The notes under the pieces: model-generated
Database searches by the model: none
Seen by the model: only the letters and a program-made list of their open reading frames with translations
Told to the model about the DNA's origin: nothing
Translations under genes and position numbers: made by a program
In this document: positions 5,018 to 44,761 of the stretch, in pieces
How the letters are laid out: the number at the start of each line of letters is the position of its first letter
Position numbering within the stretch: the stretch's first letter is position 1
Source of the DNA: Pocillopora damicornis
Taxonomy: Eukaryota
Direction: 5' to 3'
NCBI RefSeq assembly: GCF_003704095.1
Contig: NW_020845264.1
Location: 310,001 to 374,000, forward strand
Length of the DNA stretch: 64,000 nucleotides

Positions 5018-5096
5018 CCCTAACGCTGACACCGCCAAGATGGCCGAATCCCGTACTTGACTTGGTTTCAGGTCCCACTCTGTCATAGCATCCAAC
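5018..5096. promoter_or_regulatory. Very short divergent interval between the RNPS1 and EEF2KMT start codons, with YY1-like motifs
   Basis: Start codons at 5017(-) and 5097(+); CAAGATGGCCG near 5036 and CAACATGGCGG spanning the EEF2KMT ATG. Confidence 0.6.
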
Positions 5097-8000
5097 ATGG
5101 CGGACGGCTTTAGTCTTTTGAACCTTGATGTTATTCAGAAGCAGTACTTGCAAATGGCTCCGTTGAAATTATTTCTTTGGAAAGTAAGATTATTTTGCAG
5201 AAAGAGTCAGTGGTGACACGACTGAAAATCTTCGGCGGCATATCTTTATTTTCGGGCAGCATAACTTCGGGCGAGATGACTTACTGACAACTTAATTTAA
5301 ACTACTCTTATATAACAAGGCATTTTTTCCCAAACTTAAAAAACTTTTTAAGCCACTGTTGTCGTTCATCGCGCAACTGTCATGTATAATGAAGTATGAG
5401 GTTGTACAGGAATCTCTTCGGTTGATTTAAACAATTTTATTCTCAATGTTATTGATTTTTCAGGCACTTGAGCAGGCAAGTCTCGACTTGGAAAAACAGA
5501 GAAAAATCCTATGCATGGTTTGTCTCATACATCTATCGATTTCAATTTTTTTTGCGTATTTGAATTAGCCATTGAAATATTTAATTATTTTTCAGACTTA
5601 TTTCTTCACTGCAGAATCGTCGTATGCTCCTTCGGTATCGTACCAAAGACTGTTTCTGAAACGCATGCTGAAGTTATGTGAGGACAGGTGTATCAAGATC
5701 GCGGATGAACTCTATGAAGCATACGGAGATGTGTGTGGTAAAGCAGAACACCTGGATAACAAGTGCTTTAAAACATATGTACTGGTGAGGTTCATTCAGA
5801 AAAGTATTGGGGACAATCATCAAAAACGAAAGATTTCCATTCAACCCCATGCTATTCTAAAACAAAGCCTTGGTCCCAGAGGTAATCTGTTTTTGTCGTG
5901 GGGGTAATTTTTTAAAGAAACTGTGGTGCTACCTTTCTTTTATCTGAGAACTGTACCCTCAATGAAGCATGGGGTAATGTGGGAACCTTGCCATCAAAAT
6001 TGACATATACATACATGCCAAGGTCTAAGAAAGTTATAGTATGTGTGTAACTATGATATACAAAAGGCACCACCCATATAAATTGGTTCAAGGACCCTTG
6101 TTCCTCTGGGGCATTTTGGAAAAGGCAACCCCTTTTAAGACAAAAAAAGTCATTTTTAATGTTGTAAGCCATTTATAATTAGAAAATTGGGTGACAGGTT
6201 TTACCCTTGTGAAGGACTTCTGGTGTCATACATTCTGCATCAGATAGGGAAAGTTCTATGTACAAGCATAAGAGTTAGGTGTGTGATCAAGAATATTCTC
6301 AGTGAGAGTATTTAGCATGTGATTGGGTGAATTATTCCTAAAACCTGTGATCTGTTAGGCCTGACATTTTAAGAGGAGCCTAATTAAATGTTAATTGATA
6401 ATTGAGGCAACCTTCAGCAGACTAACAATTTCCATAGAAGAAGGAAATAGTTTACCACTGGCCTCTTCATGCCAAATAAACCATAACATTAAATGGTTTA
6501 ACCTTTGATCACTTTTTAAGCCATGTGGGGCCTTGTTAACCCTTGAAGAAACTCAACAGTTTATCTCTAAAGGAACAACAGGACTTAGCACCTGGATGGT
6601 GAGTTTTCCTCTAAGATAATATCATAATTACTGGTGGTAATTTTTATGTATCCGGGAATGTATCAAGGTGGACTGTTATAGTAAGACGTAGCTGGATTTT
6701 TATAAAAGCCATAGGGGTAAGAACTCAGAGGAAAAATGTTACCAGTAACAACAGATACTTTTCTGCTCACTATTGGTTTTATGCCCACCATTTGATCCAC
6801 GATCAGAACATTATGATAATTGTTCTCATTTTTATTTTTATTCATTGTATTTAAGTCATGGTTTTGATGTAGATTAAATCTTGTAAATGGTAATTTTTTA
6901 ATGTAGATATAAGATTTGGCATGTAACTAATTTTCTCTTTTATTTAAATAATTATTTATTTATTCATCTACTGCTATTTAATTTTCAACTCCTAGTATGG
7001 TGTAAACTGTTTCAGCAGTGTCCCTATTAAAGTGAGAACTATGAGTAGGTCACTCTCCAAAAATTCAACAGGGGTGGAAGGGTAGGAGCTAATTTCTAAG
7101 GGTTGTATTATCAAAATGTTTACATTTGATTTTCTTTTGGAATGACTGATATCACAGGCAGGAGAATACCTTGCTGAGTGGGCACTAGAAAACCCTTCCC
7201 TATTTCAAGACAGGTAACTGTATGCTTGGCTTCAGATTAAGAAAAAGACCAACAACTTGAACTGCAAGTTAAAATTGCAGTTTATTCCATGAAAAAGATG
7301 GTTATTTTAAAAATGAAAATCATTATGCAGGCTTGGCAGTCTTGATGCCATCTTAATGTCTTTAGTTTTTGGCAGTAATAAATATTCAGAGGGCTTGGGG
7401 GATATGCTAGTTGTACCAATGATAAGTGTGCTAAAGATTTGGCTTAAATCCTGGCATGTATGGCAATTGTGTTGTACACTTGACAACTCATTTTGACATT
7501 GCTGCATTGGTTTTGACATTAAAATAAATCTTGCAAACTGTTAGGGAAACCACATGAAATATGGCAGGGTCACCAACTGTAGTAACCCATCTTTTAAGGC
7601 TGGAGTAGTTTTACAGTCAGTTGCTTCATTTGTCAGGAAGGCTGGGGTAGTTGGGGTCGTACAAATCATTCTTGAAGGGTTTCATAGTTCCCAGTTTCAA
7701 TTCTTCCATTTGCCATTCATTTTCTTTGGTGTTATTTTCCAGATCCATCATAGAGCTGGGCTGTGGTACTGGACTTACAGGACTTTCTATTTGCTCCATG
7801 AGTTCACCAAGCCAGTACATATTCAGTGACTGTCATAATGAAGTGTTCAAAGCACTTCAAAGCAACCTTGAACTGAATGGATTTGTCATAAGCCAGGCAG
7901 ACAGTGAATTACCATATTTAAATAACAAAAGGACTTGTGAGTCTCACACAGAGAGTGACATGCATAAACATTGGAAAGGATTGGCTCTCAGGAATCAAGA

Positions 8001-9557
8001 TAATCATGGCTACTCACATCACAGAGATATAACTTCTCAGCAAGACTCTGGAGTGACAACCAGCAAGACACCTGATATGGAAATAACTTTACACAAGTTT
8101 GACAAAACACCACAGTGTATGGCATGTTTATCAGACTATTCTGAAAGTGAAGATATTCATGACCTGTCAAGTTGTGCGTCAGATTTCATTGCTTGCTATT
8201 CAAGACATCCTTCAAGTCAGATAAGGCACTTAATTGAAGACTGTGCCAATCATTCTTGGGACACTCAAGTTGACATTTGTAAATTAGACTGGACAACTTT
8301 AAAGAAGAGTGATTTGAGGAGATTTTCAACTGGGATTATTTTAGCTGCTGGTATGTATAGGGAAATATGGTACACTTTCTCTTAAGTGTAGGACACTCAT
8401 GGGGTGTGGCTGTGGTGGGGGATGATGATTAGGTGATGCTAAATCCACAGAATGTACACTAAGGTGACTTTGGTGTTGGCACTATGTGAAGTTCTTTTCT
8501 GTCCAATAAGGCAATTTAAGCCATGATGATGAGGCCTCACAAGGCCAAAACAGCTGCACTATGCTGCTCTCTTGGTCACTTACTCCTTCAGCTTCTTCTG
8601 TATGATAGAGGAAACCACGGATCACTTACATCAATGCCTTGTAGCCATGAGTGCTCATCCTGAGGTTTCAGTGCACCATCTTAAATCAGACAATTGTTTT
8701 AATCTTGCATGACACCACATTAAGTGTAATCTGATGAATTCTTTCATACTGGTTTACAAATAACAGACACAGTGGTGATTTATCAAAATTGAAAATCTTT
8801 TAGGACCAAATGATGAATTTGTGAAAAGTATGTGTAATAGTTATGGAGATGAAAAGTTCTTCCCATCAAAAAAACCTGCCATCAAATTGGAAGACAAAGG
8901 TTCAGGTCAAAGCACATCAAAAGCAGTTGGGTTTGCCTTTTAGCTCTTGTATGACTAAAAAGCATGAGTGTGTTTGAGTTTTCTTTACTATAAATTGTGC
9001 TTTTAAAAACAAAACTGTTTTTAATTTCTTTAATAGATGTTATTTATGATAGTGAGTTGACCCCAGCATTAGTGAGAACTTTGCATCTACTCTTAAGGTA
9101 AGTACTGATCAAGTTAGTATTTTTTTTTGTCATGGTAGCTTCTCATACAAATTTACTTTGTTCATAAAAATGTCATTACTTGAGAAAGTTAACTAATGTT
9201 TTAACATGTGCATCTGTTGTAGTACTGGTGGCGATAAAAGGGGGAAACCTGTTGCTTTCATTGCTTCAACCATCAGGAATCTGCAAACATATGAATTGTT
9301 TCTTAATTGCCTTTGTAAGTAAAGTTAACTTCATTTGATTCCATTAGTAAAATTAAAACATTTTTATTATGATAAGTGTACAATTGCCCTTAATTTTAAA
9401 AATGTTCTTTGCAAAAAATTATAATTCTGAGGTAGAGTATTTTGTTTGGTTTGCAGATGAACACGATATTTCCTGCAGTGAAGTAACCAAGCCAGCAAAT
9501 CAAGTTTTTTATTATGATCAGAGTTGTGAAATTAAAATTATCAAGCTTGAAGTCTAA
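5097..9557 (+). CDS. EEF2KMT: Protein-lysine N-methyltransferase EEF2KMT/FAM86A-like (9 exons)
   Basis: Exons ~5097-5183, 5464-5517, 5596-5784, 6521-6598, 7158-7213, 7743-8350, 9037-9097, 9223-9314, 9456-9557. FAM86 N-domain (YQRLFLKRMLK, DELYEAY), GTTGLSTW-AGEYLAEW, motif I IIELGCGTGLTG, YIFSDCH, LDW, AADVIYD, ASTIRN. Confidence 0.9.
8526..8557 (+). ncRNA. Degenerate minimal hammerhead-like motif in an EEF2KMT intron
   Basis: ATGATGA-GGCC-tcacaa-GGCC-AAAAC-AGCTG resembles CUGAUGA/stem II/GAAAC, with both core strands mutated. Confidence 0.4.
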
Positions 9558-10393
9558 TTTAATGAGCTTTAATTGTGTGGTATTCCTCAGACAAAATAAT
9601 GTAACAGCTTTCCTTTGTTCAAAAGTTATTCATACTTTATTTACTATACACAATGATATTGGAAGTTTTACCACACAATACATTTTTACATTAAAACTAA
9701 ACCAATTAACATATTATTAGAAAAGTTTTTAAATACTTAGTACTATGAAGTAGTCATTCTTAATAGTAAAACTAAAATTCAGAAGAAGTCAGATGAAACC
9801 TAACAGTGTCATTCAAATGAAACAAATAAATTAATTTATTCTGGCCTTTTTTCCGAACTGATATAGTTGAAAATCTCAGAGATTGAAGAATTTTTTAATG
9901 TAGATCATTTGTTGAAAAGGAAAAACAATTTTAATATTGCTCCATTCTGCAATTAGCTAGCAACCTTAAAAATATATCATTACATTCAAAGGGTAGTTAC
10001 TTTTAGAACTTTAGAGTAATCCACCCTTGATGATCATTTTCATATTAAGTCTCATAAATCATAACTTTGTTTTTACCATGTAAAATATCAAATAGGATTC
10101 TATTCTAAAATTTCTTTCCTCGCAGATTTAAAGTAATTCATTAATTCTAAAGCCCAGATGCCACTTAGTCATTTTAATTCATTCTTAAAGTACTCTCTGT
10201 AGAGAAGTTTCCTACCAACATTTAATTACTTTTACTGTTTACAATTTGCAGAAAGGAAATGGCAAAACTATAGAATACATTTATTAAATAAAACACCACA
10301 TATCTACAATTGCTCTTTACTGAACTAAGAAAATGCTGATCTTTTAGAAGAATCACACAAAACTTGAACCTGTCTGGGGTTTGCAACTCTTCA

Positions 10394-30554: not shown

Positions 30555-33500
30555 TCAGACTGAATCTCCCCCTCCGTTCAACAGGCCAGGGGGAAGGAAT
30601 GTCGTCATGGAAGGGCTTACAAGCCCGTCTCCTGATCCTGACTGAGGCTCCACATCACGTGGGACTCCAGCTGGAAAGGACCACATACTGGGTACTTGGG
30701 AAAAGTTTCCACCAAGGGCTGTTTGCTGTGAAGGGCCTGTACCCCACAAGTAGGACGGTGCTGGTGCGTGTCCATGTGCACTACCCCATGGTACACTGGG
30801 AGCTGCAGTGTTAGGCTTTGCCCCAGGCTGTTCGCTTCCCTGTGAGCCGATTACCCACTGAGGGCTGGGGGCATTGACCTTGGACTGTTCGCCAGCAACA
30901 AGGCCTTGCGAGGGCGAGGGCAGTGTCCCTATCGTAGATCCCCACTGCATTCCAGATGTGGTGTTATTTACTTTTGGGATGGGCTGTTCAGTGCTTGATA
31001 CTCCGGGTGGAACCTTGCCAATCGGTGCTTTGGTTGTAGATTGAATATTGTCCGAAGTTGCCGCAGAACCAAGCACGTTCTGAAAGGACCACTGATTACC
31101 GTACGTGTTGCTGGGAAATGGGTTTGCACTCCAATCCATGGTTTGCTCAAAGAAGCTACCGATGTCACTGTCTGTAGCGAAGTCTGCTGCCACCTGGGAG
31201 CCAACCAGCATCATGCCATTCAACGCTGCCCTCGCTTTTGCCGCTTCTTCCATGCTGCCGTAACGGATCAAGCTGTTCCCATGGCGAAGATTCAACTGAA
31301 ATGTGAGCAGTGGCCCATGCCTCTCGCACATAGGACGGAGGGTCTTGGGATCCATCTGCAAGCGAGACAAGATCATTAAACGATTGTCATAAGTTCCTCT
31401 TCCTGCTAATTCTTCGATACAGCAGATAAATATTCAATCGACAGTAACATTTGCCTTTTTTTACGATGTATCTGCTAAGAGAGTGGGTGATATGGTAAGT
31501 AATGTCATGTTAATCACGTAAGGAACTAGACCAGACTGTATGACTACTCACTCATGATACTAATATTATGACTTGGCTATGTGGGGAAAAAAGATAGTTG
31601 CCAAGAATTTTCCATTACATTGCCTTAACTGGCTTTCAGATAAAAGAAAGGATTTTAATGGACTCGACAACGTAAGAGCAAAACTCACCCTTGGTGACAA
31701 ATTGCGCAGTACCAGCCAAGTTGACATGGAATTGACAGCAGTTCTAGAAGGAGCAACACCGCTAGATGCAGATACAGGGGGGACAGAAGTCCCAGGTAAA
31801 TTCCCTGAGAGCTTCTCCTCAGCACTCGGTATGGGTTGATTCGTTGACCAGATGATCCCTGAGTTTTGCAAAGATGATGGCTCGGTTGTGCTCACACTTC
31901 CACTACGGTTTTCACTTGTTGCCATAGTTACAGATGATGCCGACGATGACAGAGTAGGAGCAGGACCCCCGACAGCAGCCCAAGGTTGAGGGTTGGGTGT
32001 CAAAGGACTAAACGGCTGCGTACTGCTATCTCTTGGACTCCATGGTGTTGAACTGTTCGCAAACCCAAAGCGACTGAACTGAAACTCAGGCTGGGTTTTA
32101 TCGCCTCCAAGACTGGAACCATCTATTAAGCTTTTCAACCAAGCAGGAGGCTCTTCGTCAAAGAGAGGGGATTCAGGTAAAGTGGTGTCAGATCCCAACC
32201 CAGGGGGAGGTCTCAACAGTGATGCAGCACTGGATCCTGCAGATCTACTTGTCGCTTGCGCAGGTGGGGCAGGGGCTTTATTGCCTAGCCATGGGGTTGA
32301 GCCTACGCCAAAGTCGATTTGACTTGACTCAAATGTATGGTTATTGACCAACAGTCCTGAGAAGGAAGAACTTGCAATGGTAGTGACAACATTGTCTGCT
32401 ACCTTTACATTGCTTCCAAGTTGTACGCTGCTGGGCGCACTGACAGTTTGGTTTCCCAAATTCGACCAGCTATCTGATGAGGAGTCAATAGTGGAAGATG
32501 GACGACTGGAGCTTTCCACGGTGTTGGGAGAAACACTATCTCTCACTTCATCTCTTTTGTCAGATTTTGGAGCAGGGCGCCATGGTACACCTGGTTTAAA
32601 TTCAGGTGGGTCAGCAGACAGCTTGGGACCAGCGTCCACACCCCACCTGCTTGAAACTGGATCAGGAATTCGTGCCCGTGGAGAAACATTGTTGCTGTTT
32701 GGAGCTGAGGAATCAGATAGGTCACTGGTTGAAATGGATGGAGCTGATACGACACTGGTTAGCACACCTGAAGATGATTGTGAAGGAGCTGATATTGTCT
32801 GAGCTTTGGAGTCCACTGAGGCTGGTGTGCTGCTAGTGACGGTGGACTGAGTGACTGGTGCTGATGAAGGTTCATGTAACAATGGCTGCTTCCACTGTGT
32901 GAGCCTAGACTGAGTAACAGGAGAAGGTTGCTTGGGTTGTTCTTCTGATGTCACAGGAGAAACAGCAGATGGTTCGCTGGGCTGAGACTTAACAGCGTCT
33001 GCTGTCTTGCTCGTTGGTGCCTCTGTTGCTGGTTTGTCATTAGTTGCGGCTTTATTGCCCTTCTGTTGTGCATTAGGTGACTGCTGTTGCTGCTGCTGTT
33101 GCAGTAGAGATTGCTGCTGTTGTTGTTGTTGTACTGCAGTAAACGGCAATGCAGGATGTCTCCCGGCCAGCCCAGGCTGCTGCTGCAGAACTTGCTGTTG
33201 CATCTGAGCAATCATGAGTGCAATCTGCTGTTGCTGTTGATACAATTGTTGTTGAGGCACTACCTGTTGTTTCTGTCCTAAGTGTTGCTGAGCAACAGAC
33301 TGTGCAGCCAGGCGCTGTTGAACGAGCTGAAGTTGAGCTATCTGCTGCAGCATAGCAAACTGCTGAGGGGTGAATGGAGGCTGAAGAAGACCTCCCTGAG
33401 CCATTCTCAGCTGCTGCAGATGTATCTGTTGTACAAACTGAGGATGAAGTAATGGATGAGCAAGTGTTGGTCTCAATGGGCCCTGTACCCCTGGGCCTGG

Positions 33501-36500
33501 GGCAGGAGGTACTACTGGTGGACCAGATCTTTTGCCGTTGCTAGGCAATTGCGATTGCCCATTTATGGGCTTTACTGCCCCAGCTACAGATGATGGAGGT
33601 TTTTCAGGTTTTGTTGTGCTCGTGGAAGTTTTTGTTTTAGAGTCTTGTTGTACTTCATCCGTTTTAGAAGTTGATTGAGTTTCTGAAGTCTTGTCTTGTT
33701 GTTCACTGGCAGGTTTAGTAACAGATTCACTGACTTGAGTCACAGACTTTGAAACTGCGACCTCATTTTGTCCTTGCCTTTGTTCAGTTTTTGATTCAAG
33801 AGTTTGTTGCTCGGCTTGCTGTTGCTGTTGAAGTTTCCTTCGTTGTTTGCGGTTTAGTTTACCTTGACCTTGCTGCTGTTGCTGTTGGATTCTTGCTGCT
33901 TCTGCAGGATCAGGCTCTTGGAGTTTTCCACTTGGAACTGATACAGACTGTTCCCTGTTTTCGCTCATGTTCATGGCCAGTAGGTCCCCTGAAAGCACGG
34001 CAACAGATAACGTTATGAATGTTATATCTGACCTTCTGATCAAAATCAGTTAATTAACTCTTAGCTATCAGTTGGGTGATATTGTTTTGATATACCAAAT
34101 TCTTAACACAGGCCATCACAAAACTCTAAGGTAAGCAGTTGGGAGAATCTGTTCACATATCTTTGAAATAAAAAAGCGTAACGTCTGGAGAACTGAATGT
34201 GGTGTGGGATAAAGTTCTATACTATGGAAGGGAGAGTGGTGGAGACCAAAAAAATTTATATTGGGAAAGGAATACGCAAAAACCAATTGAGCCACAAATG
34301 GATTGGTGTAAGAAACATAGGCAGACAACCTGTGGCTGGTCACAACTTACTTATCACCTATTCCAGAATTTCGATCCCCTTCATAATTTTCCTTTTTTAT
34401 AAATTCACTTTACCTATTTCAAACGTTTTCAAGTGGAATTCCCCATGAAAATCTTCTTAAACATTAACCCACTGGATTTTTCAAGAACCGCAAACCAATT
34501 CTGAACTTTTACATTAAAAGAGACCCTATAATAAAATAATGACTGAGAATCATACCTATTGCACTCTCGATGTTCATATGATTTGCCTTCAAAGCTTTTT
34601 CAGCATCCTCTTGCTGCGCAAAATAAGAAACATAATGGTAAAAGGAAACCATTTCAGCTGAGACAATCAAAATTGTCTGTACTTTATATAGTTCTACACC
34701 TAGGAAATACGTTTGAAAACCCGTGCATATTTCGAAAAGAATGTTCTCAAGTTCTCAAATAAGATTAACACGCATCAACTGCATGAATATGCATAGGAGA
34801 TCACTCACCTTGAAACCCATGTCTAACAGTTGTTTGAGAGATCTGTTCATCCACGCATTTGAGTCATTAGCTGGTTTGGGAGCCTAAAACATTTTGAGAG
34901 TAATGATAATTATTTCTCATAAGCAACCAGCCAGAATTTCCATAATAAAATGTAGTGACAGGAGAAAAGCATTAAGAGACAGGAGAGTATTATCCACTTC
35001 TCAGTATAAAATAGCCCAGGCCAATGAAATTTAGCCCTGGTTGAATTTGTCTGCTCTCACATAACTAAGGAACACACAGACTGACCTTAATACAATATAA
35101 TAAAAAAACCTTAGCAACCAGAATAAAGTTTACTCACTTGACCTAGAGTAATTGTAAATCCACAAAAGAGCGTCTGCCTACTATTGACCAGTTACAACAA
35201 CATACAGATGAATCCCGATAACTTAAATCGCTGCTAACTTGAACCTTGCACTAACTCAAACCAAAAGCGATTTCCCCAGGATTTCCGTCATACAATTGCT
35301 GTAATTTTAACCTCGGCAATCTACGTTTCCCCTAAGGTCTTTCTCTATCTATCTTTAACACTCAATAACTCGAACTGTGTCAAACCACATTTGCCAATAC
35401 ATGTGAACTTGAGACAAACGTGTACTGCAGTCCAAAACATTAAATGAAATTATTTTGAAACAGCCCTGTAACATTTGTTGTTTTTCCACATTACAAAAAC
35501 ATGTCAGTCCAGTTCAGGTTTCCTTGGTTTAGGATACATTAAACTACAGTGCCTTTATCTTCATTTCTCAATAACTCAAATTCCCGTTAAATCAAACCTT
35601 TTTCAATTTTTCTTGAAGGTTCAAGTTAACAGGATTTGACTGTAGTAGTCAAATTCAAGTCAGAGACATTTCTTACCCTATTTCTTTTAGATGCTGTGGT
35701 CCACCCATCTAGAGATCCCTCAGATCCTTCATCATTATCCAAATTTTCTTGTCCCCATTCTAAATCTGCAAGTGACACTCCTGTACTCTCTAACCACTGT
35801 GAAACTTTGCTGCTACTCACGGTTTTAAGATCAGAAGTTGTGTCTGATTTTGACACTACATTGTCCCAACAAGAGGTACCCGTGATATCTACAGAAGATC
35901 CCCATTTAGATGAATTAGACACAGGTACTTCACCCCAGCCAGATGAAGGTTTAGTAGTAGAGGTTGAAGTTACAGTTTGTTCAGATTCAATGTCCCCACT
36001 TGATTTGGCCACAGAATTAGAGTCCAAAATAGGTGGTTTACTAGACTTGGAATTTGTGAGTCCATCCGAAGTAGAGTGAGGTTCAGTCCATTTAGTATCA
36101 GTCTCAGCAGGGGTACCACCCCATGAGGCTGTCAGATTACTAGTAACCACTGTTGATGTTGTTGGCACTTTAGGCTTGACAGCCTTTCCAGGTGTTTTGC
36201 TCCAGCTTGGAGTCTCAGATACATATGAAGTGTTCACAAGCTCTCCTTTTCCTGGGTCATGACTGCGCCCTAACGACACTGAGTCCTTTGCATCTGTGCT
36301 ACTCTCCCAGTTTGAACCATTCCCTATTAACCCCCCAAATCCCCCCTTGGTCACTCCGCCCCAGCCTGCCCCAAGTCCTCCATTATCTTTTGCCGTTGCT
36401 GCTTCAGCAGCATCAATAGCCTGATCAATAGACTCATCAATGACATCCCAGTTCTCAGATGATGTTGTTGAAGTCCCATGCCAATTACTAGTTGGCAAAG

Positions 36501-39500
36501 ACTTTTTGTCCATACTAGTGTTGACATTTCCTTGAGCAGAACTTGAATTGTCAGAGATAAGTGCAGTAGACATAGAAGAAACAGAAGTTTTAGGAGAAGA
36601 TTCTGCTGAATACTGACCCTTTTCAGAGCCAGCATCCAAGGAGGAAGTCTTTATCTTATCACCTATTGCTCCTTTTGATCCTACAGATGGCCAAGTGTCT
36701 TTATCTCCTTCATCCACAACAAGTTTATCCCATGTCCCTTCCTTATCTCCCCATTGTCGATCCTCACTTCCCCACTTGTCTGCATCTTCCCAAGTTTCCA
36801 GTGAATTACCCCAGCCTGACCCCTTCACAGGGGCAGATTGTGACCAGCCTGAGTCATCCACTGGTTCTATCATGTCTGCAAATTCTTTTGGTCCAAAACG
36901 ATTAGGATCCTTCTTCTTGTTAACTAACAAAAAAGAATTATCAGACAGTTGAAGGCCCACTATCACATGTCATAATTTGTGTTTTATATGTAGACAATAA
37001 TTATCACTTGCATAATGAGCTTAAGTCTTTAACTGAATAACAAATATGATAATTCCTTCATCAAACTGATCAGGTTGAGTCTTCAAAATCAAATTTGTTC
37101 ATGGAAAATATTGAAAAATAAGGATTCAAATAGGAAAATCTATATGTATTTCCAGTAGGTAGCCCAAGTTTTGATATAAATGTGTCCATATTGTTCTTAA
37201 CACCAAGCCTTTTTTTCCTTAATTAAAAACCAGACATCTATGCAGTCAAAGAAAATAATTTTCAACAATTCTACCTCACTGTTCTTTTTACTACTAGTCA
37301 CCTGCAGGAGGCTGTTTTGGTTGAGGTTTGGTTTGTTGTGGAAGTGATTGTTGTTGCTGCATTTGTTGTGAAGGTGTTTGATACTGTGATTGTTGTTGCT
37401 GTTGTTTCATTTTCTTTTGGAACCTTGGTGGTATTTCTCTTGGATATTGTTGCTGATCTGTTCTCTGCTGCTGTTGTAGTCTCTTCATGTTCTGTAGCAG
37501 TAAAAATGATAGTGTACAGCATAATTGATTATGTCTGAAGGACTGCCAGAATCATTACAGCTGTAACAGATAACTAGAGCTCATGGTTCTCATGTGCTAA
37601 AAAATTCCATTCTCTTCCCCCCAAAATTTTATGAATATGACATGGTAACTTTACTCACTCACTCTTCCTTAAATAAACAAAATCTCTCTTTCAAAGGTTT
37701 ATTTTAATTTGTTTCACAACTATCTCATTTTTTATTGCCACTGCTGTTATATTTTTTCAAAAAAATTGTTGCCTTGTCAACGCAGAGCACTCAGTTTGCC
37801 ACCTACTAAAATATTCAGACTTTTTATCCATAACTGAACTACAGATAAATGCACAGTTAAGTGTGGATGAATGTAAAATTCTTTAGACACTCATGAAATA
37901 TTTAACATTAATCTAATCTGTATCTAATTCAGAGCTTTGCATGGAAGATAAGAAGAAAATGAAACCGATAAGTTCAACATTTACCTGATTTTTGTTTGCC
38001 GCCTTCTCTTTGTCTTCTTTTTCTAAAAATAAAACAATCATTAATTACAGCCTTGAAAAATGAAAGTAATTCGCCTAAGAGTTAAAAACCAAAAAAAATA
38101 CAAACAAATTTTAAAAACCCATACATAATAAGCATATTAAATGCTTTGCCAAATTCACAATCATACCTTTTGCAGCCTGTTGGGCAGCCTGCAGAATAAA
38201 AAAAATACTAGTGAAGTTGATGTACTATTAATTCTCATGTAAGGTGAGATGCTGTGGGTTTGGTGAACCAATTTGCAAGTATTTACAAGATGTTTTGGGA
38301 ATTAATACCAGTTTATGAAAGTCATCAAATGCTGTGCCTTGTATCAGCTGATAAAAATCTGACAAATTCAAGTAAACCCTAAATTATTCACTGTAGGTCA
38401 AAGCATGGTACCATTTGCAAGATATCAAACCCAGTAGATATCAAACTGGTATGTTAGAAAACTCATGCAAAAGATGAATAACAATCTTATCAGACTAATG
38501 AATTCAGACTGTTGATTTAACTGATTCAAGATAACTTGTAATGACATTTAATTTGTGTAACAAAATCATGAACCTTTCTTGCTGCCTTTTCCTTCTCTGC
38601 CTTTTCTTTTTCAGCTTTCTTCCTTTTTTCTTCTTCTTCTCTGCGTTTTTTCTCCTCCTCCTGCTGACGACGTCTTTTCTCCTCTTTCTCTTGCTCAAGT
38701 TTTTGCTGTCTTTCCCGCTCCTTTTGTTCCCTACGGTGGTCATGATCATAGACAAAGATAAGTCCCTGAGTCCCTAAAAGGATATGACCCTCACACCATT
38801 CAATTTTGTGGCTTCCCAAAATTGAATTAGGAAAGATGGACAGCTCAGTCATATAAGAAAGAGAGATAAATAAAAAAGAGTGTCATGCTTGGGACAAAAA
38901 AAAACTAATAAACAAACTGTTGATCAATTCTCATTCAGCAAAGCCCAAAGTTCTGTAAATACACTGAATAGCTAACAACTTCACTCTCTTTTAATCTTAA
39001 GATTTTTTAAATGAACACAGAAAAAAAATACTCAGCCCTGTACAAAATGGCTTCAATTGAATTTTGCAGGGTAATACAGAGTTCCATGTTCAACTACCTC
39101 CCGAATGAGGTGGAAATCTTTGCATACATGTAAAAACAATATTACATTCAATGTGCTAACAAAACAGAAAACATACATCAGTTTTAACCACTGGAAAAAA
39201 ATCTTCAACATAACAACAGTAGTTCTACAGAAATTTCCTAAAAGCAGACAAACAATACAATCTTACTTTTCCCGCCTTTTCCTCTCCTCATTCTGTGCTT
39301 TAATTCTCTCTTCTTCCAGCCGTTTCTGTTTCTCAACCTCAAGCTATAAATGCATAGGAAGTTTGAGTTTTTAATGAAAAGTATAGGACACACTATCGAG
39401 CTATTGCCTAGTAGCTTCTCTCTCTGGCTGATTGATACCTTATCTATTACACATGTTCCAAAACACAATCATATCCAAACCTACTCACTTGTTTCCTTTG

Positions 39501-42500
39501 TTTCTCTTTTTCCACTTCCTCTTTTCGCTTCTCTTCTAATTCCACTGCAATCTTCTCCATTTCCTACAAAGCAAAATAATTCCAGAGAACAGCTTTTCAA
39601 ACACACTGAAAAGTCTGAAGACTTAATTAAGGGTATGTAATTTTCAAAACTAGAAAAAACATATGACAAGGCATACTACTATGCATAAAACAAAATACAT
39701 GAAACAGCAACTACTAACTTTTTCTCTCCGTCGTTGCTCAGCTTGCAGTTGTTTCTTGCTCTTAGGTTTTGGCTAAGAATTAGGTTGATAAACATTATTA
39801 ATAAACACGACACATTTAGTATCTGCAGATTTAAAGCACTGCCAGCATATAACCAAAAGTGATCATTCTGTTACACACTAGATACCAACCTTTGCAACAG
39901 GTACAGGCATCTTCCCTTTCTTGCTTGACTGCTGAAAATTTCAAAGGACAAGATATTTATAGAGAAGACTACAACTTGAAATTCTTTACCATACAAGTTA
40001 ATGTAAAAGGAAAGTATAGAACAGATGAGCAAGAAAATTCTGAGAAGTCACAACTTGTTGGACAAATGAATATACAGGCTGGGATGATCAGTGTTAGTCA
40101 ATGGCAGATGGTGGTGTAGAAGGCCACATTGAGAGAGGCAATGGCCTCTGATCACTAATCCCGGGGTTGAGAGTTCCAGATTCAAATACTGGGCAGGTCA
40201 ATGTGTTGTATTCTTGGGTAATACACTTAACTTTCACAGTGCCTCTCCCTTCCCAGGAGTATAGCACTGGCAAATTGTCTGGGAAGCCTGATAAAATGCT
40301 GGGGGGGGGGGGGGGGGGGTAACCTTTGGATGGACTGGCATTTCATCCAGGGAGGAGTGGTAATACTCCTAGTCACTTCATGCTACATGGAAACCAGGAT
40401 AAGGTTTAGCTAGGTGGGCCAATAGGCTTGAGTACAGACTTCACCTTTTTAGGCCACACCAAGTTTTTTCCTGGTCAGAGAGAGATCCACATTTGGAATC
40501 ACATTAATCTTCCTCTCATTTCAATTCTGATCATCCAGAAGACATAATAATGTTTCCACATAACACCTTGATGGTGATAACTTTCTTCTCAATTCAGGGC
40601 TGTAAGTTTTCAAGCAAAAAACATACTAACAACCATTTATTACCTTTTTAGTAGCATCTCTCTTCATGTCTTCTTTGTGTTGATTTAATTTACTCTTCAT
40701 ATCCATCAACTAAAAACACAACAATTTTCCAAGTTAATGCAATAAAAGTTTACAAAAACAAGAACAATTTTAGTTATTTCAAAAACTTACATTTTCTTCT
40801 TTGAACTCTTCAGGAACATGTTTTCCTTTCTTTTTGCGATTCTAAAATAAACAATGTAAGAGAGACCCTTAGAATTTAGGAACTTTGAAGAACCACTTAG
40901 ACAAAATCAGAATGAAATCTCATATTTGGACAGAAATATTTCCAAAAATTTTAATTTTCCATAAGCTATCAGCTTTTTAATGGATAAAAATAATTGGTGA
41001 AAGGGGTTCAATAACAAATTTAAGTATAAGAAATAATGGAAAGGCTGAGAGATCAATAAATATAACACATAACGAAAACCGAAAAAAAGCAAAAGTAGTA
41101 ACTCTGAGGTGAACCAGGAGGTAGGTTCTGTCATTAATCTTGTGTAACCCAAGCACTTTAGAAGGGGGGGTAAGTTTTTAAAGAAACTGTGGTGCTGCAT
41201 CAGTTTGAGAGTATAACAGGGTAATTTGGTACTCTCAACTCAGTTGAATAACATACATTGGCCACTGTAAAGAGTTACAGAGCTGATATTTCAAGTGTGA
41301 TGAAGGGCTAACACTCAAAATATCAGGTTTGTAACTCTTTACAGTGGCCAATTTACATTATCAACTCAGTCAATGATAAAAAATTATACTTAAGAAGTAA
41401 CTGATCAATTACCAACTAACAGAAGCACTAAGCTTTATTGGACAAAGTGTTACCTTAATGATCTCCATGATACTATCCAAGTCACCCTCTCCATCAACGT
41501 CCTCGTCATCTTCAGTATCTTGGTATCTGTTTCATGTGCAAAGTATATAATGTAACATTTCAGTAAACATTCTCAAAGGCAATCAGCATGTGCAATATCC
41601 ACAAAACATCACAAAGCCAGTGAAAAGAATAGAAATGACTATAAAGTATAGAAATTTGTTTCTATGCAATGTGAATTCACACAAGGAACTTAAAAAAATG
41701 GAGCACAGTTTACAAGGAGAAGTCACTTTCTATTACAGAACTGTAAGGAGCAATAAAAAAAAAAGCAGTCGTCTACTGCAAAAGGTAAACGACAGCTACC
41801 GTTACATTTAAAGAGGTGAAATATTTGTGTAAAGAAAAAAAAATACAGCTACAAAAATACAGATGACCAATAAGAATAATACTTAATTCTCACCTTGAAT
41901 CGAAGTCTCCATCAGAGGAACATGGGTGCTGCTTAGAACCACAGAAATATGTAAGAAAGTTACTAGTTCCAGCTCCTTCTGCATCTAGACAAGAACAAAA
42001 CAAATTGTAAGTTTTAATTATTCCCTAAATTGATAAATGGCCCTCACACCTATTTTCAATCAATTACTGATGATAATAACTATTGACAAAGTGTCAAGCT
42101 CCTATTATCTCAAATGAGCACAAAAGCACCAAAACAAATTGGCATAACAGCTAGTTGTTACATTGACAAACCAGTTGAAGAACCATACATGTAATGGCAT
42201 TTTACAGTCTGTTATTTTTTTAAAAACTTGATAACTCACTGAAACCAGCTCAAGACTAAAACTTGCATGGTCTTCATACTGTATAGGTGAACGGTAATTG
42301 GAAATCTTACAACTAATTGCTTTATCTAGATTCCTAAAGCCTCCATTACAATAACAGTGAGGGGAAAAAAATCCCCATTCTCGAGTTAACCAACGTTTTT
42401 ATCAAGACAACTGTAAAAGATAGGAATGGCTTGTTTGTATTTACACAATAAGTGGGTTAACCGATTCCGGTTTAGGTTTGTGTAGTGTTTACGTGTCAAT

Positions 42501-43659
42501 CGTAGATTGTTAGTAGCAGGGATGACATTGTGTTAATTAAGTACGGTAAAGCCAAACCTGTATAAAACCAAACGTTACACTTAAAACAGCGATAAAGGAA
42601 GCAATTTGCAAATTCTCTTACCTTCTCTCCAGTCAAAGATATCGCGTAGAAAGTCAAAGAAAATCTAAAGAAAAATACAAATTCTTAATTTTCCATCTAA
42701 CTGTATCTCGTGTAAAATGGTATACATCATAAAGAATTCTTTCTGAGGAGAACTCTTAAGTTTAAATAAAACAGATCACATAAATTTTACCTGATCGTAG
42801 TCTGGTTGATTTGTATCGTTTCTGTAATCTGTGTAAAAGAGAAAAAGGAAGAGACATCACGCAAATCCTACAAAGATCTCGCTGTCTGAAACTTAATAGT
42901 CGTACATGATTGAAAGGCACGCAATTCTGGCCAGATACAAAATTAGAAAGTCATATTAACAGAACTACTAAATTAATGACACTACCATGATCTGTCGTTG
43001 CAAATAAATGAATGCAAAGTTAAAATCGCTGTTACCTAAAGTGAGAGATTCAAAAGCTTTGCTGATTTCATCGAACTGCTTTTTAGAGTTGCTTGCCGAG
43101 AAGTCGCTCTGGTTCTGAAAAGTGAAAGCAAGGTCAACAGAGTGAGACTAAATTATCAACTTGGCAAAGAGAAAGTACCAGAGAATGCTGGAATGTCAAT
43201 ACTAAATAGCAGACGTAAAGTTAAAATTTTAAGAAGAAGTGAAGTACTTTTGCTGAAAAAAGAAAGTAACAACAACTGCACAACTGAAATTCTATATAGC
43301 GTAACTTTACCTTGTCAGGGTGAAATCGGAGTGCAAGTTTCTTATATGCTCGTTTGATTTCGAATTCATCTGAAAAATAATCGGCGATATAAGGTAAACC
43401 GTCTTATATTACGAAAACCAACAAATTACAAATTCAAATACATTTTCTGTGGAGTAAATCTAACTATGTGCTAGCCTAAAATTATTCAACGAGCGTGTGT
43501 TCCATCGCCCACTTCAACTCGGAAGTTCCAGGATAGTGAATCGCTTGTAGGATGTACTGTGGTAAATAGGGTAACATAACCACGGAAAAACCTACTTTCA
43601 GGTGAATATTTATCCACTCCCAGTATCTTAAGGTATTCCTTCTCCTCTTCTTTTGGCAT
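30555..43659 (-). CDS. TNRC6: GW182/TNRC6 miRNA-effector protein with N-terminal DnaJ (J) domain, 21 exons
   Basis: Phase-compatible GT-AG exon chain from ATG 43659: J-domain (YLKILGVD/EIKRAYKKLALRFHPDK/KQFDEISKAFESL), acidic segment, K/E coiled coil, YPREIPPRF, GW/WG repeats (35678-36921), UBA (LKQLLDMGFKQEDAEKALKAN), Q-rich, PAM2 (PPEFKPGVPW), RRM (WLVLRNL..LRPMCERHGPL), W-rich tail ending LPPGLL. Confidence 0.93.
35205..35642. mobile_element. Tc1/mariner-like MITE in a GW182 intron
   Basis: TA|CAGATGAATCCCGATAACTT ... AAGTTAACAGGATTTGACTG|TA: imperfect TIRs with a TA duplication. Confidence 0.7.
40128..40447 (+). mobile_element. tRNA-derived SINE with central conserved domain and poly-G tract
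   Basis: Decayed B-box AGATTCAAATACT, TGTGTTGTATTCTTGGGTAATACACTTAACTTTCACAGTGCCTCTC core, G run at ~40300-40319, 3' TACAGACTTCACCTT. Confidence 0.65.
41165..41390. mobile_element. Penelope-like pseudo-LTR arranged as an inverted repeat around a decayed hammerhead
   Basis: Arms ATTGGCCACTGTAAAGAGTTACA / TGTAACTCTTTACAGTGGCCAAT flank GTGATGAAGGGCTAACACTCAAAATATCAG. Confidence 0.7.
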
Positions 43660-43747
43660 TTTAACGCGTTGTCCCTCATGTATCTGTAAAACCCCTCATC
43701 AAATTTCAAAGATTTCTAGACTCAATCGTCTTGAGCGCTTCATAAAT

Positions 43748-43782
43748 CCAACATGGCGATCCCTTCCGATGACGTCACGTGG
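43748..43782. promoter_or_regulatory. GW182 proximal promoter motifs: YY1-like, CRE and an overlapping E-box
   Basis: CCAACATGGCG followed by ATGACGTCACGTGG (TGACGTCA overlapping CACGTG), about 100 bp upstream of the ATG. Confidence 0.5.
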
Positions 43783-44761
43783 CTAAACCTATCCCAGCAT
43801 TCATATACTAATTTAGCGGTACTAGTCAAAATATCGGGTAAAATTTGGTACAACAAAAATTCTCTTTAACAATTATTAGTTATATATACTAAAAAAACCA
43901 CCCACTGAGAAAGACGTACACTGTAACCTTTGTAGATGAAAGAAAGGTTGGCAAGGGTGGCTTGTTTCCTAGGTTCAAGTGACGCAGTGCATTGAATTTC
44001 AACCGGAAGCAAAAACACAGGGATTTGCTCTGAAATATTTCAGAATTCTTAAGACCTTTGAAGCCTTATTTCTATTACAAATTTGTGTCGATTAACATCA
44101 AGTTCCGACACCGATTCAAATACGGTTTTACCAATCCACCTATGCCATGCTTATTATGCCTGATTTCAGATCGTGCAAATGGCAAGATCCGCGTAAAAAC
44201 AAACTAGCTATGTTCATTTCAGTCTTGGTTCTTAGGCCCTCGGAAAGTTCTGCAAGACCAGTGTTCTTGTAAACATGGCAATCAGGAATTTTAATTATCT
44301 AACACAGAGATATGGATGCATGCATATACAACGTAAGAATCTAGAAACTGACACTTAAACAGAAGAGGAATAAGGTTTAAATCCGATTGCATTTCTAGCC
44401 CTCTCATCGTGAGGGATTTCTGTCGCCTGAGGCTCCTGATGTGAGGCGGAAGTCAGCCGCTTACATACAGAGAAATTTGGGGATCGGGCTCCTTAAGGAC
44501 GGGACGGGACAGAAACGTTCGGTCATTTGAACAATGAAAGTTTGCCTTGGCTTGAAATGGAAGTTGAACTTTTTCCGGATTTATTGAAATTCTTGATTAA
44601 CGCATACCTCATCCTAACCTGGTGGAAGGTAGTGAGGATGGACGAACTTTTCGATCATAGAGGAAGTCTGTACCAGACGTCACATGACAAGACGACTCAG
44701 CCTCGTCTTGATGAATAGCGTGACTATGAAAGCGCCCGCGATATCTGGAACGCTAAACAAA

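What the first reader, a model, noticed from the sequence alone, without database searches (positions are those of the whole stretch)
30555..43659. GW182 carries an intact HPD-motif J-domain: an Hsp70 co-chaperone built into the miRNA silencing scaffold
Seen: three small exons absent from the ORF track (43659-43596, 43369-43311, ~43115-43036) encode MPKEEEKEYLKILGVDKYSPENEFEIKRAYKKLALRFHPDKNQSDFSASNSKKQFDEISKAFESL and splice in frame through 18 more exons to the GW, UBA, PAM2 and RRM regions. Established: HPD J-domains activate Hsp70; Hsp70/Hsp90 load Argonaute; bilaterian GW182s lack this domain. I recall a DnaJ domain being noted in sea-anemone GW182, so the architecture may not be new, but I know of no assigned function. 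Inference: direct Hsp70 recruitment to RISC or P-bodies for loading, recycling or condensate dissolution, linking silencing to heat stress.
Basis: partly seen in the sequence, partly recalled or inferred. Interest (0 to 1): 0.75.

Follow-up and report, generated by a model that had tools for sequence, protein, structure and literature searches.

The report
Coral GW182 gene with J-domain
This stony-coral gene for the microRNA-silencing scaffold GW182 really does begin with an Hsp70-recruiting J-domain, but the same architecture and the same functional idea were published for corals and sea anemones in 2013, so it is a well-confirmed rediscovery.

Summary
Observation confirmed. On the minus strand a 22-exon gene (43659-30555, 5,700 nt, 1,899 codons, 21 GT-AG introns, no in-frame stop) starts with a J-domain. 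Exon 2 alone passes Pfam DnaJ (28.0 bits, cut-off 27.8) and carries HPD. The gene continues through a K/R/E-rich helix into GW-rich, UBA, Q-rich, PAM2-like and GW182-type RRM regions.

Contigs from four poly(A)/RNA runs of four studies show the splice chain from the HPD exon to the GW exon (exons 2 to 18). Thirteen of 14 listed joints occur in 4 of 4 runs, and one 1,329-nt contig spans exons 1/2-17. The "separate gene" rival is therefore essentially refuted. Junctions 18-21 rest on frame, homology and conservation. Junction 21-22 is seen in a related coral's transcript-derived protein.

It is not new. Moran 2013 reported a DnaJ domain on GW182 of Acropora, Hydra and Nematostella and proposed Hsc70/Hsp90 Argonaute loading. 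Zielezinski 2015 and Mauri 2016 repeat the architecture. My searches found no experimental function.

Added nuances:
- The whole ~400-residue N-terminal module is conserved in Anthozoa.
- An octocoral (Xenia) model has FPD instead of HPD.
- RefSeq predicts a J-less Nematostella isoform.

The scan had no earlier GW182 note.

The parts
43596..43659 (-). Exon 1: start codon and J-domain helix I (MPKEEEKEYLKILGVDKYSPE)
   Evidence: Read. GT donor. 13 of 21 residues identical to the Nematostella GW182 N-terminus. The junction to exon 2 is not directly shown by RNA. The contigs run 127-236 nt past exon 3, but only the first 30 letters, which are exon 2, are printed.
43311..43369 (-). Exon 2: J-domain helix II and the HPD loop (EFEIKRAYKKLALRFHPDK)
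   Evidence: Pfam DnaJ 28.0 bits, above the 27.8 cut-off. PDB J-domains. Joined to exon 3 in 4 of 4 RNA runs: the loose end at 43116 equals window 43313-43342.
43036..43114 (-). Exon 3: J-domain helix III (..KKQFDEISKAFESL..)
   Evidence: 15 of 24 residues identical to Nematostella residues 40-60. Joint 42828|43036 in 4 of 4 runs. No Pfam or PDB hit on its own.
42791..42828 (-). Exon 4: end of the J-domain (..PDYDQ)
   Evidence: Joints on both sides in 4 of 4 runs. GT-AG and in frame.
42622..42664 (-). Exon 5: conserved FFDFLRDI motif
   Evidence: 8 of 9 residues identical to Nematostella and 6 of 10 to Xenia. Joints in 4 of 4 runs.
41894..41984 (-). Exon 6: conserved F.TYFCGSKQH motif
   Evidence: 67% identity over 27 aa to Nematostella. 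Joints in 4 of 4 runs.
41454..41526 (-). Exon 7: acidic stretch
   Evidence: 56% identity over 25 aa to Nematostella. Joints in 4 of 4 runs.
40791..40841 (-). Exon 8: start of the K/R/E-rich region
   Evidence: Joints in 4 of 4 runs. Aligned to Nematostella.
40644..40709 (-). Exon 9
   Evidence: Joints in 4 of 4 runs. Aligned to Nematostella.
39890..39931 (-). Exon 10. Its counterpart is where the predicted J-less Nematostella isoform X3 joins.
   Evidence: Joints in 4 of 4 runs. Isoform comparison.
39719..39772 (-). Exon 11 (PKPKSKKQLQAEQRRREK)
   Evidence: 77% identity to Nematostella and 76% to Xenia. Joints in 4 of 4 runs.
39489..39563 (-). Exon 12: charged helix
   Evidence: 85% identity to Nematostella. 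Joint 39343|39489 in 3 of 4 runs (absent in X15). Joint 39562|39718 in 4 of 4 runs.
39267..39343 (-). Exon 13: charged helix
   Evidence: 88% identity to Nematostella. 100% over 15 aa in the related-coral contig L004. Joints.
38574..38730 (-). Exon 14: charged helix (K/R/E about 70% over exons 11-14)
   Evidence: 85% identity to Nematostella. 92% in L004. Composition. Joints in 4 of 4 runs.
38167..38188 (-). Exon 15 (22 nt)
   Evidence: Joints on both sides in 4 of 4 runs. The 'side' value is only 21 nt because the exon is that short.
37985..38022 (-). Exon 16
   Evidence: Joints in 4 of 4 runs. 100% over 12 aa in L004.
37302..37491 (-). Exon 17: Q-rich, with conserved YPREIPPRFQ
   Evidence: 59% identity to Nematostella. 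69-77% in four related-coral contigs. Joined to exon 18: the loose end at 37302 equals window 36894-36923 in 3 of 4 runs. X15 record 9 carries 567 nt of exon 18 plus exon 17.
35677..36923 (-). Exon 18: GW/WG-rich putative Argonaute-binding region (415 aa)
   Evidence: 20 W, 13 GW or WG, and 22 [GST]W/W[GST] motifs. 38% identity over 438 aa to Nematostella. Single copy in the genome. No Pfam Ago_hook hit.
34809..34883 (-). Exon 19: start of the UBA domain (..SLKQLLDMGFK)
   Evidence: Aligns with the UBA of TNRC6/Gawky proteins. 83% identity to Nematostella. 100% in L004 and L005. The junctions are not RNA-verified.
34556..34613 (-). Exon 20: middle of the UBA domain (QEDAEKALKANHMNIESAI)
   Evidence: blastp-short E 3.6e-6 to 1.7e-4 against the UBA of three TNRC6-type proteins. 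Weak Pfam UBA-like hit, E 0.06. The junctions are not RNA-verified.
31689..33988 (-). Exon 21: end of the UBA domain, Q-rich region, PAM2-like PPEFKPGVPW, W-motifs and the first RRM strand (WLVLRNLSPR)
   Evidence: 13.1% Q. The EF.PG.PW motif is shared with 9 of 10 bilaterian TNRC6/Gawky hits. 39% identity over 778 aa to Nematostella.
30555..31355 (-). Exon 22: rest of the GW182-type RRM, C-terminal W-motifs and the TGA stop (30557-30555)
   Evidence: The only PDB hit is the Drosophila GW182 RRM 2wbr, E 2.4e-9. The junction with exon 21 is seen in the transcript-derived protein P0022 of a related coral, which reads ..LRNLSPRMDPKTLRP... With that junction, RRM_1 reaches 21.2 bits against a 20.7 cut-off. 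Single copy.

Best explanation
This is the single-copy GW182/TNRC6 orthologue of a stony coral, tentatively Pocillopora. Shown: one mRNA encodes, in order, an N-terminal J-domain with an intact HPD loop, short conserved motifs, an acidic patch, a ~190-residue K/R/E-rich helix, a GW-rich region, UBA, a Q-rich region, a PAM2-like motif, a GW182-type RRM and C-terminal W-motifs. No G/F region, zinc finger or DnaJ C-terminal domain is present, so it is a class C (type III) J-protein. Inferred: like other class C J-proteins, it brings ATP-bound Hsc70 to one particular assembly. The HPD loop and basic helix II trigger ATP hydrolysis, so Hsc70 clamps onto nearby disordered segments. The charged helix probably acts as a spacer between the J-domain and the Argonaute-binding GW region. 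My preferred client-level reading is the least secure step. In it, Hsc70 remodels or dissolves the multivalent GW182-Argonaute-deadenylase assemblies and keeps the Q- and GW-rich disordered regions soluble, rather than loading empty Argonaute.
For: Gene model: 22 exons, 21 GT-AG introns, no in-frame stop. RNA: 14 splice joints between exons 3 and 17 lie at exactly the predicted sites, 13 of them in 4 of 4 runs from 4 studies and 1 in 3 of 4. Loose ends tie exon 3 to the HPD exon (4 of 4 runs) and exon 17 to the GW exon (3 of 4 runs). One 1,329-nt contig has piece coordinates that add up to spliced exons 1/2-17. J-domain: Pfam DnaJ on exon 2 and PDB J-domains. The colinear Nematostella orthologue scores 56.8 bits for DnaJ, and its residues 6-79 align to E. 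coli DnaJ chains, including the one in 5nro. GW182 identity: RRM to 2wbr; UBA and PAM2-like motifs shared with TNRC6/Gawky; 10 of 10 long hits of the RRM exon carry GW182-family Pfam domains. Class C: no other DnaJ-family Pfam domain in any exon or in the orthologues. Conservation: J-domain exons are 13/21, 14/19 and 15/24 identical to Nematostella, and helix exons 12-14 are 85-88% identical.
Against: No biochemical evidence exists here or in the papers I could read. The main text of Mauri 2016 never mentions chaperone, HSPA or heat shock; their GST-nvDNAJ pull-down list is in a supplement I could not open. The Xenia orthologue has FPD at the HPD position and scores 27.4 bits, below the 27.8 cut-off. 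RefSeq predicts a Nematostella isoform lacking residues 2-172. Exons 1 and 3 give no J-domain hit on their own. The whole coral J-domain was not scored or folded, because the joined step was left out. Junctions 1-2 and 18-21 are not RNA-verified in this species. The choice of remodelling over loading rests on recalled literature, not on any call.
Confidence: 0.6

Rival explanations
1. This is the published hypothesis. The J-domain recruits Hsc70/Hsp90 to load small-RNA duplexes into Argonaute, so GW182 acts before or during RISC assembly.
For: Proposed by Moran 2013 and echoed by Zielezinski 2015, citing Hsc70/Hsp90-dependent RISC loading. A J-protein, DNJ-12, binds the miRNA Argonaute ALG-1 in C. 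elegans (PMC11194074; title and abstract start only). DNJ-12's J-domain is the top PDB hit of exon 2, although a 17-residue match does not discriminate subfamilies.
Against: From recall, not from a call: GW182 binds loaded Argonaute through the PIWI tryptophan pockets, which places it after loading. In a HEK293 pull-down of nvGW182 N-terminal pieces, including nvDNAJ, mass spectrometry found no human AGO. That could simply reflect species incompatibility.
Confidence: 0.2
2. The J-domain is a J-like or decaying appendage. The conserved function of the N-terminal module lies in the charged helix and flanking motifs (dimerisation, spacing or localisation) and does not depend on Hsp70.
For: The Xenia orthologue has FPD and fewer basic residues in helix II (RLAYFK against KRAYKK), with DnaJ below the Pfam cut-off. 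tblastn of Xenia against the window found exons 7, 11-14 and 17-22 but none of exons 1-3. Helix exons are better conserved (85-88%) than J exons (60-74%) against Nematostella. A J-less isoform is predicted in Nematostella.
Against: HPD, the helix II basics and helix III are intact in this coral and in Nematostella. The Nematostella J-domain scores 56.8 bits. Only one octocoral species was seen, through three isoform models of one gene.
Confidence: 0.15
3. The J-domain and coiled-coil exons belong to a separate upstream gene, and the fusion is an artefact of reading frames.
For: Contigs cannot prove a single molecule; the tool itself warns that a contig across two genes shows no single transcript. 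Junctions 18-21 and 1-2 are not RNA-verified here.
Against: An unbroken chain of 16 in-frame GT-AG junctions from exon 2 to exon 18 appears in RNA contigs of four studies, and no competing joint is listed. No exon ends in a stop. RefSeq models of Nematostella and Xenia carry DnaJ, UBA and RRM in one protein and align colinearly to all parts of the window gene.
Confidence: 0.02

Closest known systems
Cnidarian GW182/TNRC6 with an N-terminal DnaJ domain: nvGW182 of Nematostella vectensis, and the Acropora and Hydra homologues of Moran et al. 2013
   Same: The domain order is the same: DnaJ, GW-rich, UBA, Q-rich, PAM2, RRM. The gene is single-copy. The RefSeq Nematostella protein XP_032234471.2 (1,695 aa) aligns colinearly to window exons 1-3, 6-9, 11-14 and 17-22. 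HPD is intact in both.
   Different: It comes from a different species and is longer (1,899 against 1,695-1,698 aa). Identity is only about 38% in the GW and Q-rich exons. Nothing categorical differs.
Bilaterian GW182 family (human TNRC6A/B/C, Drosophila Gawky)
   Same: It has a GW182-type RRM (2wbr, E 2.4e-9; 51% identity over 83 aa to a TNRC6-type protein). It also shares UBA, the PAM2-like EF.PG.PW motif and W-rich disordered regions.
   Different: Bilaterian proteins have no J-domain. None of the 10 long hits I scanned has one, though most are N-terminally incomplete models. Zielezinski 2015 found none in their 446 non-cnidarian genes. Conversely, the coral protein does not hit the Pfam families Ago_hook, M_domain or TNRC6-PABC_bdg.
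Class C (type III) J-domain proteins that tether Hsp70 to one machine (auxilin on clathrin, Zuotin on the ribosome, Cwc23 on the spliceosome). These names are recalled; only Cwc23 appears in a call, as 5y88_T.
   Same: A J-domain with HPD, no G/F region, zinc finger or DnaJ C-terminal domain, fused to a client-specific targeting part.
   Different: Here the targeting part is the miRNA effector scaffold itself. No activity has been shown.
DNJ-12 / DNAJA-type co-chaperones acting on Argonaute in trans (Frederick et al. 2024, PMC11194074; title and abstract start seen)
   Same: A J-domain protein is physically linked to the miRNA effector complex.
   Different: It is a separate polypeptide that binds Argonaute, not GW182, and is class A rather than class C.

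Membership tests
GW182/TNRC6 | GW182-type C-terminal RRM | tested here: met
   Exon 22 has one PDB hit, the Drosophila GW182 RRM 2wbr, E 2.4e-9. With the exon 21-22 junction, as in P0022, RRM_1 reaches 21.2 bits against a 20.7 cut-off. 51% identity over 83 aa to a TNRC6-type protein.
GW182/TNRC6 | N-terminal GW/WG-repeat region (Argonaute binding) | tested here: inconclusive
   By composition it is met: exon 18 has 20 W, 13 GW or WG, and 22 [GST]W/W[GST] motifs in 415 aa. Pfam Ago_hook gives no hit. Binding itself cannot be tested here.
GW182/TNRC6 | Central UBA domain | tested here: met
   Exons 19 and 20 align to the Pfam-defined UBA of P0082, P0088, P0099 and P0174. The Pfam hit on the exon 20 ORF alone is weak, E 0.06. 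The colinear Nematostella orthologue hits UBA at 27.3 bits and the TNRC6C UBA structure 2dkl.
GW182/TNRC6 | Q-rich region and PAM2 motif for PABP | tested here: met
   Exon 21 is 13.1% Q. PPEFKPGVPW matches EF.PG.PW, which is found in 9 of 10 bilaterian TNRC6/Gawky hits. Pfam TNRC6-PABC_bdg gives no hit.
GW182/TNRC6 | C-terminal W-motifs that recruit CCR4-NOT | not testable with these tools
   Exons 21 and 22 hold 17 W, 12 of them in [GST]W/W[GST] context. Recruitment was shown for nvGW182 by Mauri 2016, not for this protein.
J-domain proteins (PF00226) | Significant match to the DnaJ profile | tested here: met
   Exon 2 alone scores 28.0 bits against 27.8, E 2.3e-6. The whole coral domain was not scored because the joined step was left out. 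The orthologue P0206 scores 56.8 bits.
J-domain proteins (PF00226) | HPD tripeptide after basic helix II | tested here: met
   ..KRAYKKLALRFHPDK, read and aligned to the HPDK of DNJ-12 and DNAJA1. It is not met in the Xenia orthologue, which has FPD.
J-domain proteins (PF00226) | Helices I, III and IV of the J fold | tested here: inconclusive
   Exons 1 and 3 alone give no Pfam or PDB J-domain hit. They are 13/21 and 15/24 identical to the Nematostella J-domain, which aligns over residues 6-79 to solved DnaJ chains. No fold was predicted.
J-domain proteins (PF00226) | Stimulates Hsp70 ATPase | not testable with these tools
   This needs an enzyme assay. I found no such result in print.
Class A/B Hsp40 | G/F region, zinc finger, DnaJ C-terminal domains | tested here: not met
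   No DnaJ_C or DnaJ_CXXCXGXG hit in any exon or in P0206 and P0207. It is therefore class C.

The most novel reading that the evidence does not exclude
The J-domain is only the tip of a ~400-residue N-terminal module conserved across Anthozoa: J-domain, FFDFLRDI and FCGSKQH motifs, an acidic patch and a long K/R/E helix. Its inclusion may be switchable through an alternative first exon, as RefSeq predicts for Nematostella. Cnidarians would then make Hsp70-coupled and Hsp70-free GW181-type scaffolds, that is J-plus and J-less GW182, and could tune miRISC and GW-body dynamics to proteotoxic or heat stress. Octocorals, with FPD, would have uncoupled the module from Hsp70.
Probability: 0.2. Interest if true: 0.6.

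Novelty: already known. Interest (0 to 1): 0.3.

Why it matters
A chaperone-recruiting domain built into the central scaffold of microRNA silencing would physically couple proteostasis to post-transcriptional repression. That is of obvious interest in reef corals, whose main threat is heat. The architecture has been in print since 2013, but its function is still untested according to my searches. The value of this window is therefore confirmatory. It gives a fully resolved, RNA-supported 22-exon model in a stony coral, and it shows that the whole N-terminal module is under constraint, not only the J-domain. It also flags two facts that any functional hypothesis must accommodate: the FPD variant in an octocoral and a predicted J-less isoform in Nematostella.

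Tried and rejected
- Pfam on single exons: exons 1, 3, 18, 19 and 21 gave nothing. My first exon 3 query was one base out of frame. I repeated it in frame and it still gave no hit.
- PDB search with exon 1 gave only chance matches at E>2 to a repeat of an unrelated bacterial protein. Exon 3 gave nothing.
- Word searches with exon 18 and exon 21 returned almost only exon-sized ORFs called on genomic contigs, without names or Pfam. Only P0022 was spliced.
- The big search with exon 22 listed 137 hits, mostly fragments, and no full-length cnidarian protein. Of the 10 longest that I scanned out of the 137, none has DnaJ, but most lack their N-termini, so this is weak support for absence in Bilateria.
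- The metagenome loci L002-L006 are genomic and reach at most exon 13, so they say nothing about J-domain exons in those corals.
- The ESM Atlas look-up of Nematostella residues 1-400 gave only generic DnaJ clusters at scores of 0.78-0.79, below the tool's own lead level.
- The match of the K/R/E helix to CRIF1/mL64 (E 7e-5) is, I judge, compositional.
- The Rfam scan of the intron 7 hairpin gave only miRNA-precursor matches far below the gathering scores. I read the hairpin as a high-copy MITE-like repeat.
- I could not test for a J-less isoform in the coral. Contigs show no transcript starts. No competing joint was among the 15 shown, and 1 more was not shown.
- Supplements were closed. Supplementary Table S1 of Mauri 2016 (GST-nvDNAJ pull-down mass spectrometry) may already show whether Hsp70s bind. 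Table S1 of Zielezinski 2015 may explain why their Hydra model lacks DnaJ.

Full report
WHAT IS THERE

Exon 1 is 43659-43596, exon 2 is 43369-43311, and exon 3 is 43114-43036. The ATG at 43659 follows an in-frame TGA 13 codons upstream.

From the sequence I extended the model exon by exon. A script that handled each exon separately confirms 22 coding exons, 21 introns that are all GT-AG, no in-frame stop, and 5,700 nt ending in the TGA at 30557-30555.

J-DOMAIN

Exon 2 alone (EFEIKRAYKKLALRFHPDK) reaches Pfam DnaJ at 28.0 bits against a curated cut-off of 27.8 (E 2.3e-6). It also matches 61 PDB sequences at E<=1. All 60 shown are J-domain proteins or fusions that contain one, and the HPDK residues align.

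Exons 1 and 3 are too short to score on their own. My first exon 3 query was out of frame and was repeated.

No G/F, zinc-finger or DnaJ C-terminal domain appears anywhere, so this is a class C J-protein.

ONE TRANSCRIPT

I found RNA runs holding the region. They are labelled coral or marine metatranscriptomes. I laid the Logan contigs of four runs from four studies on window 37260-43249.

- Fifteen joints were shown. Fourteen are CT..AC on the plus strand, which is GT-AG on the minus strand, and they sit exactly at my predicted boundaries for exons 3 through 17.
- Thirteen of the 14 occur in 4 of 4 runs, and one (39343|39489) in 3 of 4.
- The fifteenth joint lies inside an intronic repeat. 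One further joint was not shown.
- The loose end beyond exon 3 is identical to window 43313-43342, the HPD-coding end of exon 2, in 4 of 4 runs.
- The loose end beyond exon 17 is identical to window 36894-36923, the start of the GW exon, in 3 of 4 runs.
- One 1,329-nt contig in run X5 has piece coordinates that add up to spliced exons 3-17, plus 231 nt further 5'.
- One 760-nt contig in X15 carries 567 nt of exon 18 joined to exon 17.

Caveats:
- Contigs do not prove single molecules.
- Some joints have short 'side' values because the exons themselves are 22-43 nt.
- Junction 1-2 is inferred; only the first 30 letters of the loose end are printed.

Junctions 18-19, 19-20 and 20-21 are not RNA-verified. 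They rest on three things:
- phase and GT-AG sites;
- the UBA domain being split across them;
- 95-100% conservation of exons 19 and 20, in order, in two related-coral contigs.

Junction 21-22 appears in P0022, a 1,029-aa protein from a 3,852-nt Logan contig of a coral 90% identical to this one. It reads ..WLVLRNLSPRMDPKTLRP..

IT IS GW182

- Exon 22 has a single PDB hit, the Drosophila GW182 RRM (2wbr, E 2.4e-9).
- A whole-library search with exon 22 gave 137 hits. I Pfam-scanned the 10 longest; all 10 carry GW182-family domains and none carries DnaJ.
- Named examples are TNRC6B, TNRC6C and Gawky-like proteins.
- Exons 19 and 20 align to their UBA domains. The PPEFKPGVPW of exon 21 matches a motif present in 9 of those 10.
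- Exon 18 has 20 tryptophans, 22 of the motif occurrences being in G/S/T context.
- Exons 18 and 22 are single-copy in the 234,350,878-bp assembly.

That assembly size equals the 234 Mbp quoted for the published Pocillopora damicornis assembly (PMC9646523, passage). The species assignment is only tentative.

ORTHOLOGUES

A third word search, using the longer P0022 as query, reached two full-length RefSeq models.
- Nematostella XP_032234471.2 is 1,695 aa, with Pfam DnaJ at 56.8 bits, UBA and RRM.
- Xenia sp. XP_046855350.1 is 1,591 aa, with DnaJ at 27.4 bits, just under the cut-off, and RRM.

tblastn of both against the window is colinear from the first exon to the last for Nematostella. Identity is highest in the charged-helix exons 12-14 (85-88%) and the UBA exons (80-83%). 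It is about 60-74% in the J exons and only about 38% in the GW and Q-rich exons.

The conserved unit is therefore a ~400-residue N-terminal module, not the J-domain alone. Exons 8-16 are 61.5% K+R+E+D.

Two facts cut against a simple story:
- In Xenia the HPD position reads FPD in all three isoform models, and helix II has fewer basic residues. tblastn also found no match to window exons 1-3.
- RefSeq Nematostella isoform X3 (XP_048575579.1, 1,523 aa) lacks residues 2-172 and starts with a different first exon, so it has no J-domain.

WHAT IS KNOWN

- Moran et al. 2013 (PMC3840309; passages read) found one GW182 homologue each in Acropora digitifera, A. millepora, Hydra vulgaris and Nematostella. 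They state that all carry a DnaJ domain absent from bilaterian GW182, call its role unknown, and propose Hsc70/Hsp90-dependent loading of Argonaute.
- Zielezinski & Karlowski 2015 (PMC4615383; passages) surveyed 448 genes in 185 genomes. They report the domain only in Nematostella, which conflicts with Moran over Hydra.
- Mauri et al. 2016 (PMC5314787; passages) draw the domain, built a J-deleted construct and a J-only construct, and pulled the J-only construct down for mass spectrometry. Their main text never mentions chaperones, and the list is in a supplement I could not open.
- Searches for later functional work found none. The nearest is DNJ-12 binding ALG-1 in C. elegans (PMC11194074; title and abstract start).
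- A review on chaperones in RISC assembly (PMC5084781) was seen only in a listing.

MECHANISM

Shown: an HPD J-domain and the silencing scaffold lie on one mRNA.

Inferred from the established behaviour of J-domains: it recruits ATP-bound Hsc70 and triggers hydrolysis.

Which client it acts on is open. I favour remodelling or solubilising the multivalent GW182-Argonaute-deadenylase assemblies over Argonaute loading. From recall, not from a call, GW182 engages Argonaute after loading, and class C J-proteins typically disassemble the machine they are tethered to.

The FPD variant and the J-less isoform keep alive the rival that the helix, not the J-domain, is the essential part.

VERDICT

Novelty: already known.

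Noticed in passing
window 41248-41361 (intron 7 of the GW182 gene): A hairpin with 51-nt arms, 86% complementary, and a 12-nt loop. RNA contig depth there is 3,000-10,000 against tens to hundreds on neighbouring exons, with many different loose ends. The genome has 3,304 first-look candidates, and the 40 that were scored match at about 76-89%. Rfam gives only miRNA-precursor matches far below gathering scores. It looks like a high-copy MITE-type repeat that is transcribed within many genes.
   Followed up: partly
window 43660-43790 (5' leader and promoter of the gene, minus strand): By eye, a CACGTG immediately followed by TGACGTCA lies at about 43781-43770. If the leader is as long as the RNA contigs suggest (about 110 nt), several upstream ATGs with short ORFs precede the main ATG. 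This may be relevant to stress-dependent translation. Not tested.
   Followed up: no
P0211 (Nematostella XP_048575579.1) compared with P0206: RefSeq isoform X3 replaces residues 2-172 of isoform X1 with a short alternative N-terminus. It therefore lacks the J-domain but keeps the charged helix and everything downstream. I could not check whether this coral has the same isoform.
   Followed up: partly
P0207, P0213, P0214 (Xenia sp. GW182 isoforms), residues 36-38: FPD stands at the position of HPD in all three isoform models. Only one octocoral species was available.
   Followed up: partly
window 40300-40325 (intron 9): A run of about 22 C on the minus strand sits inside a stretch with weak, unspliced RNA contig cover. 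It is probably part of another repeat.
   Followed up: no
Together with GW182, this would make two J-domain fusions to RNA-pathway proteins in one genome. I did not examine it.
   Followed up: no
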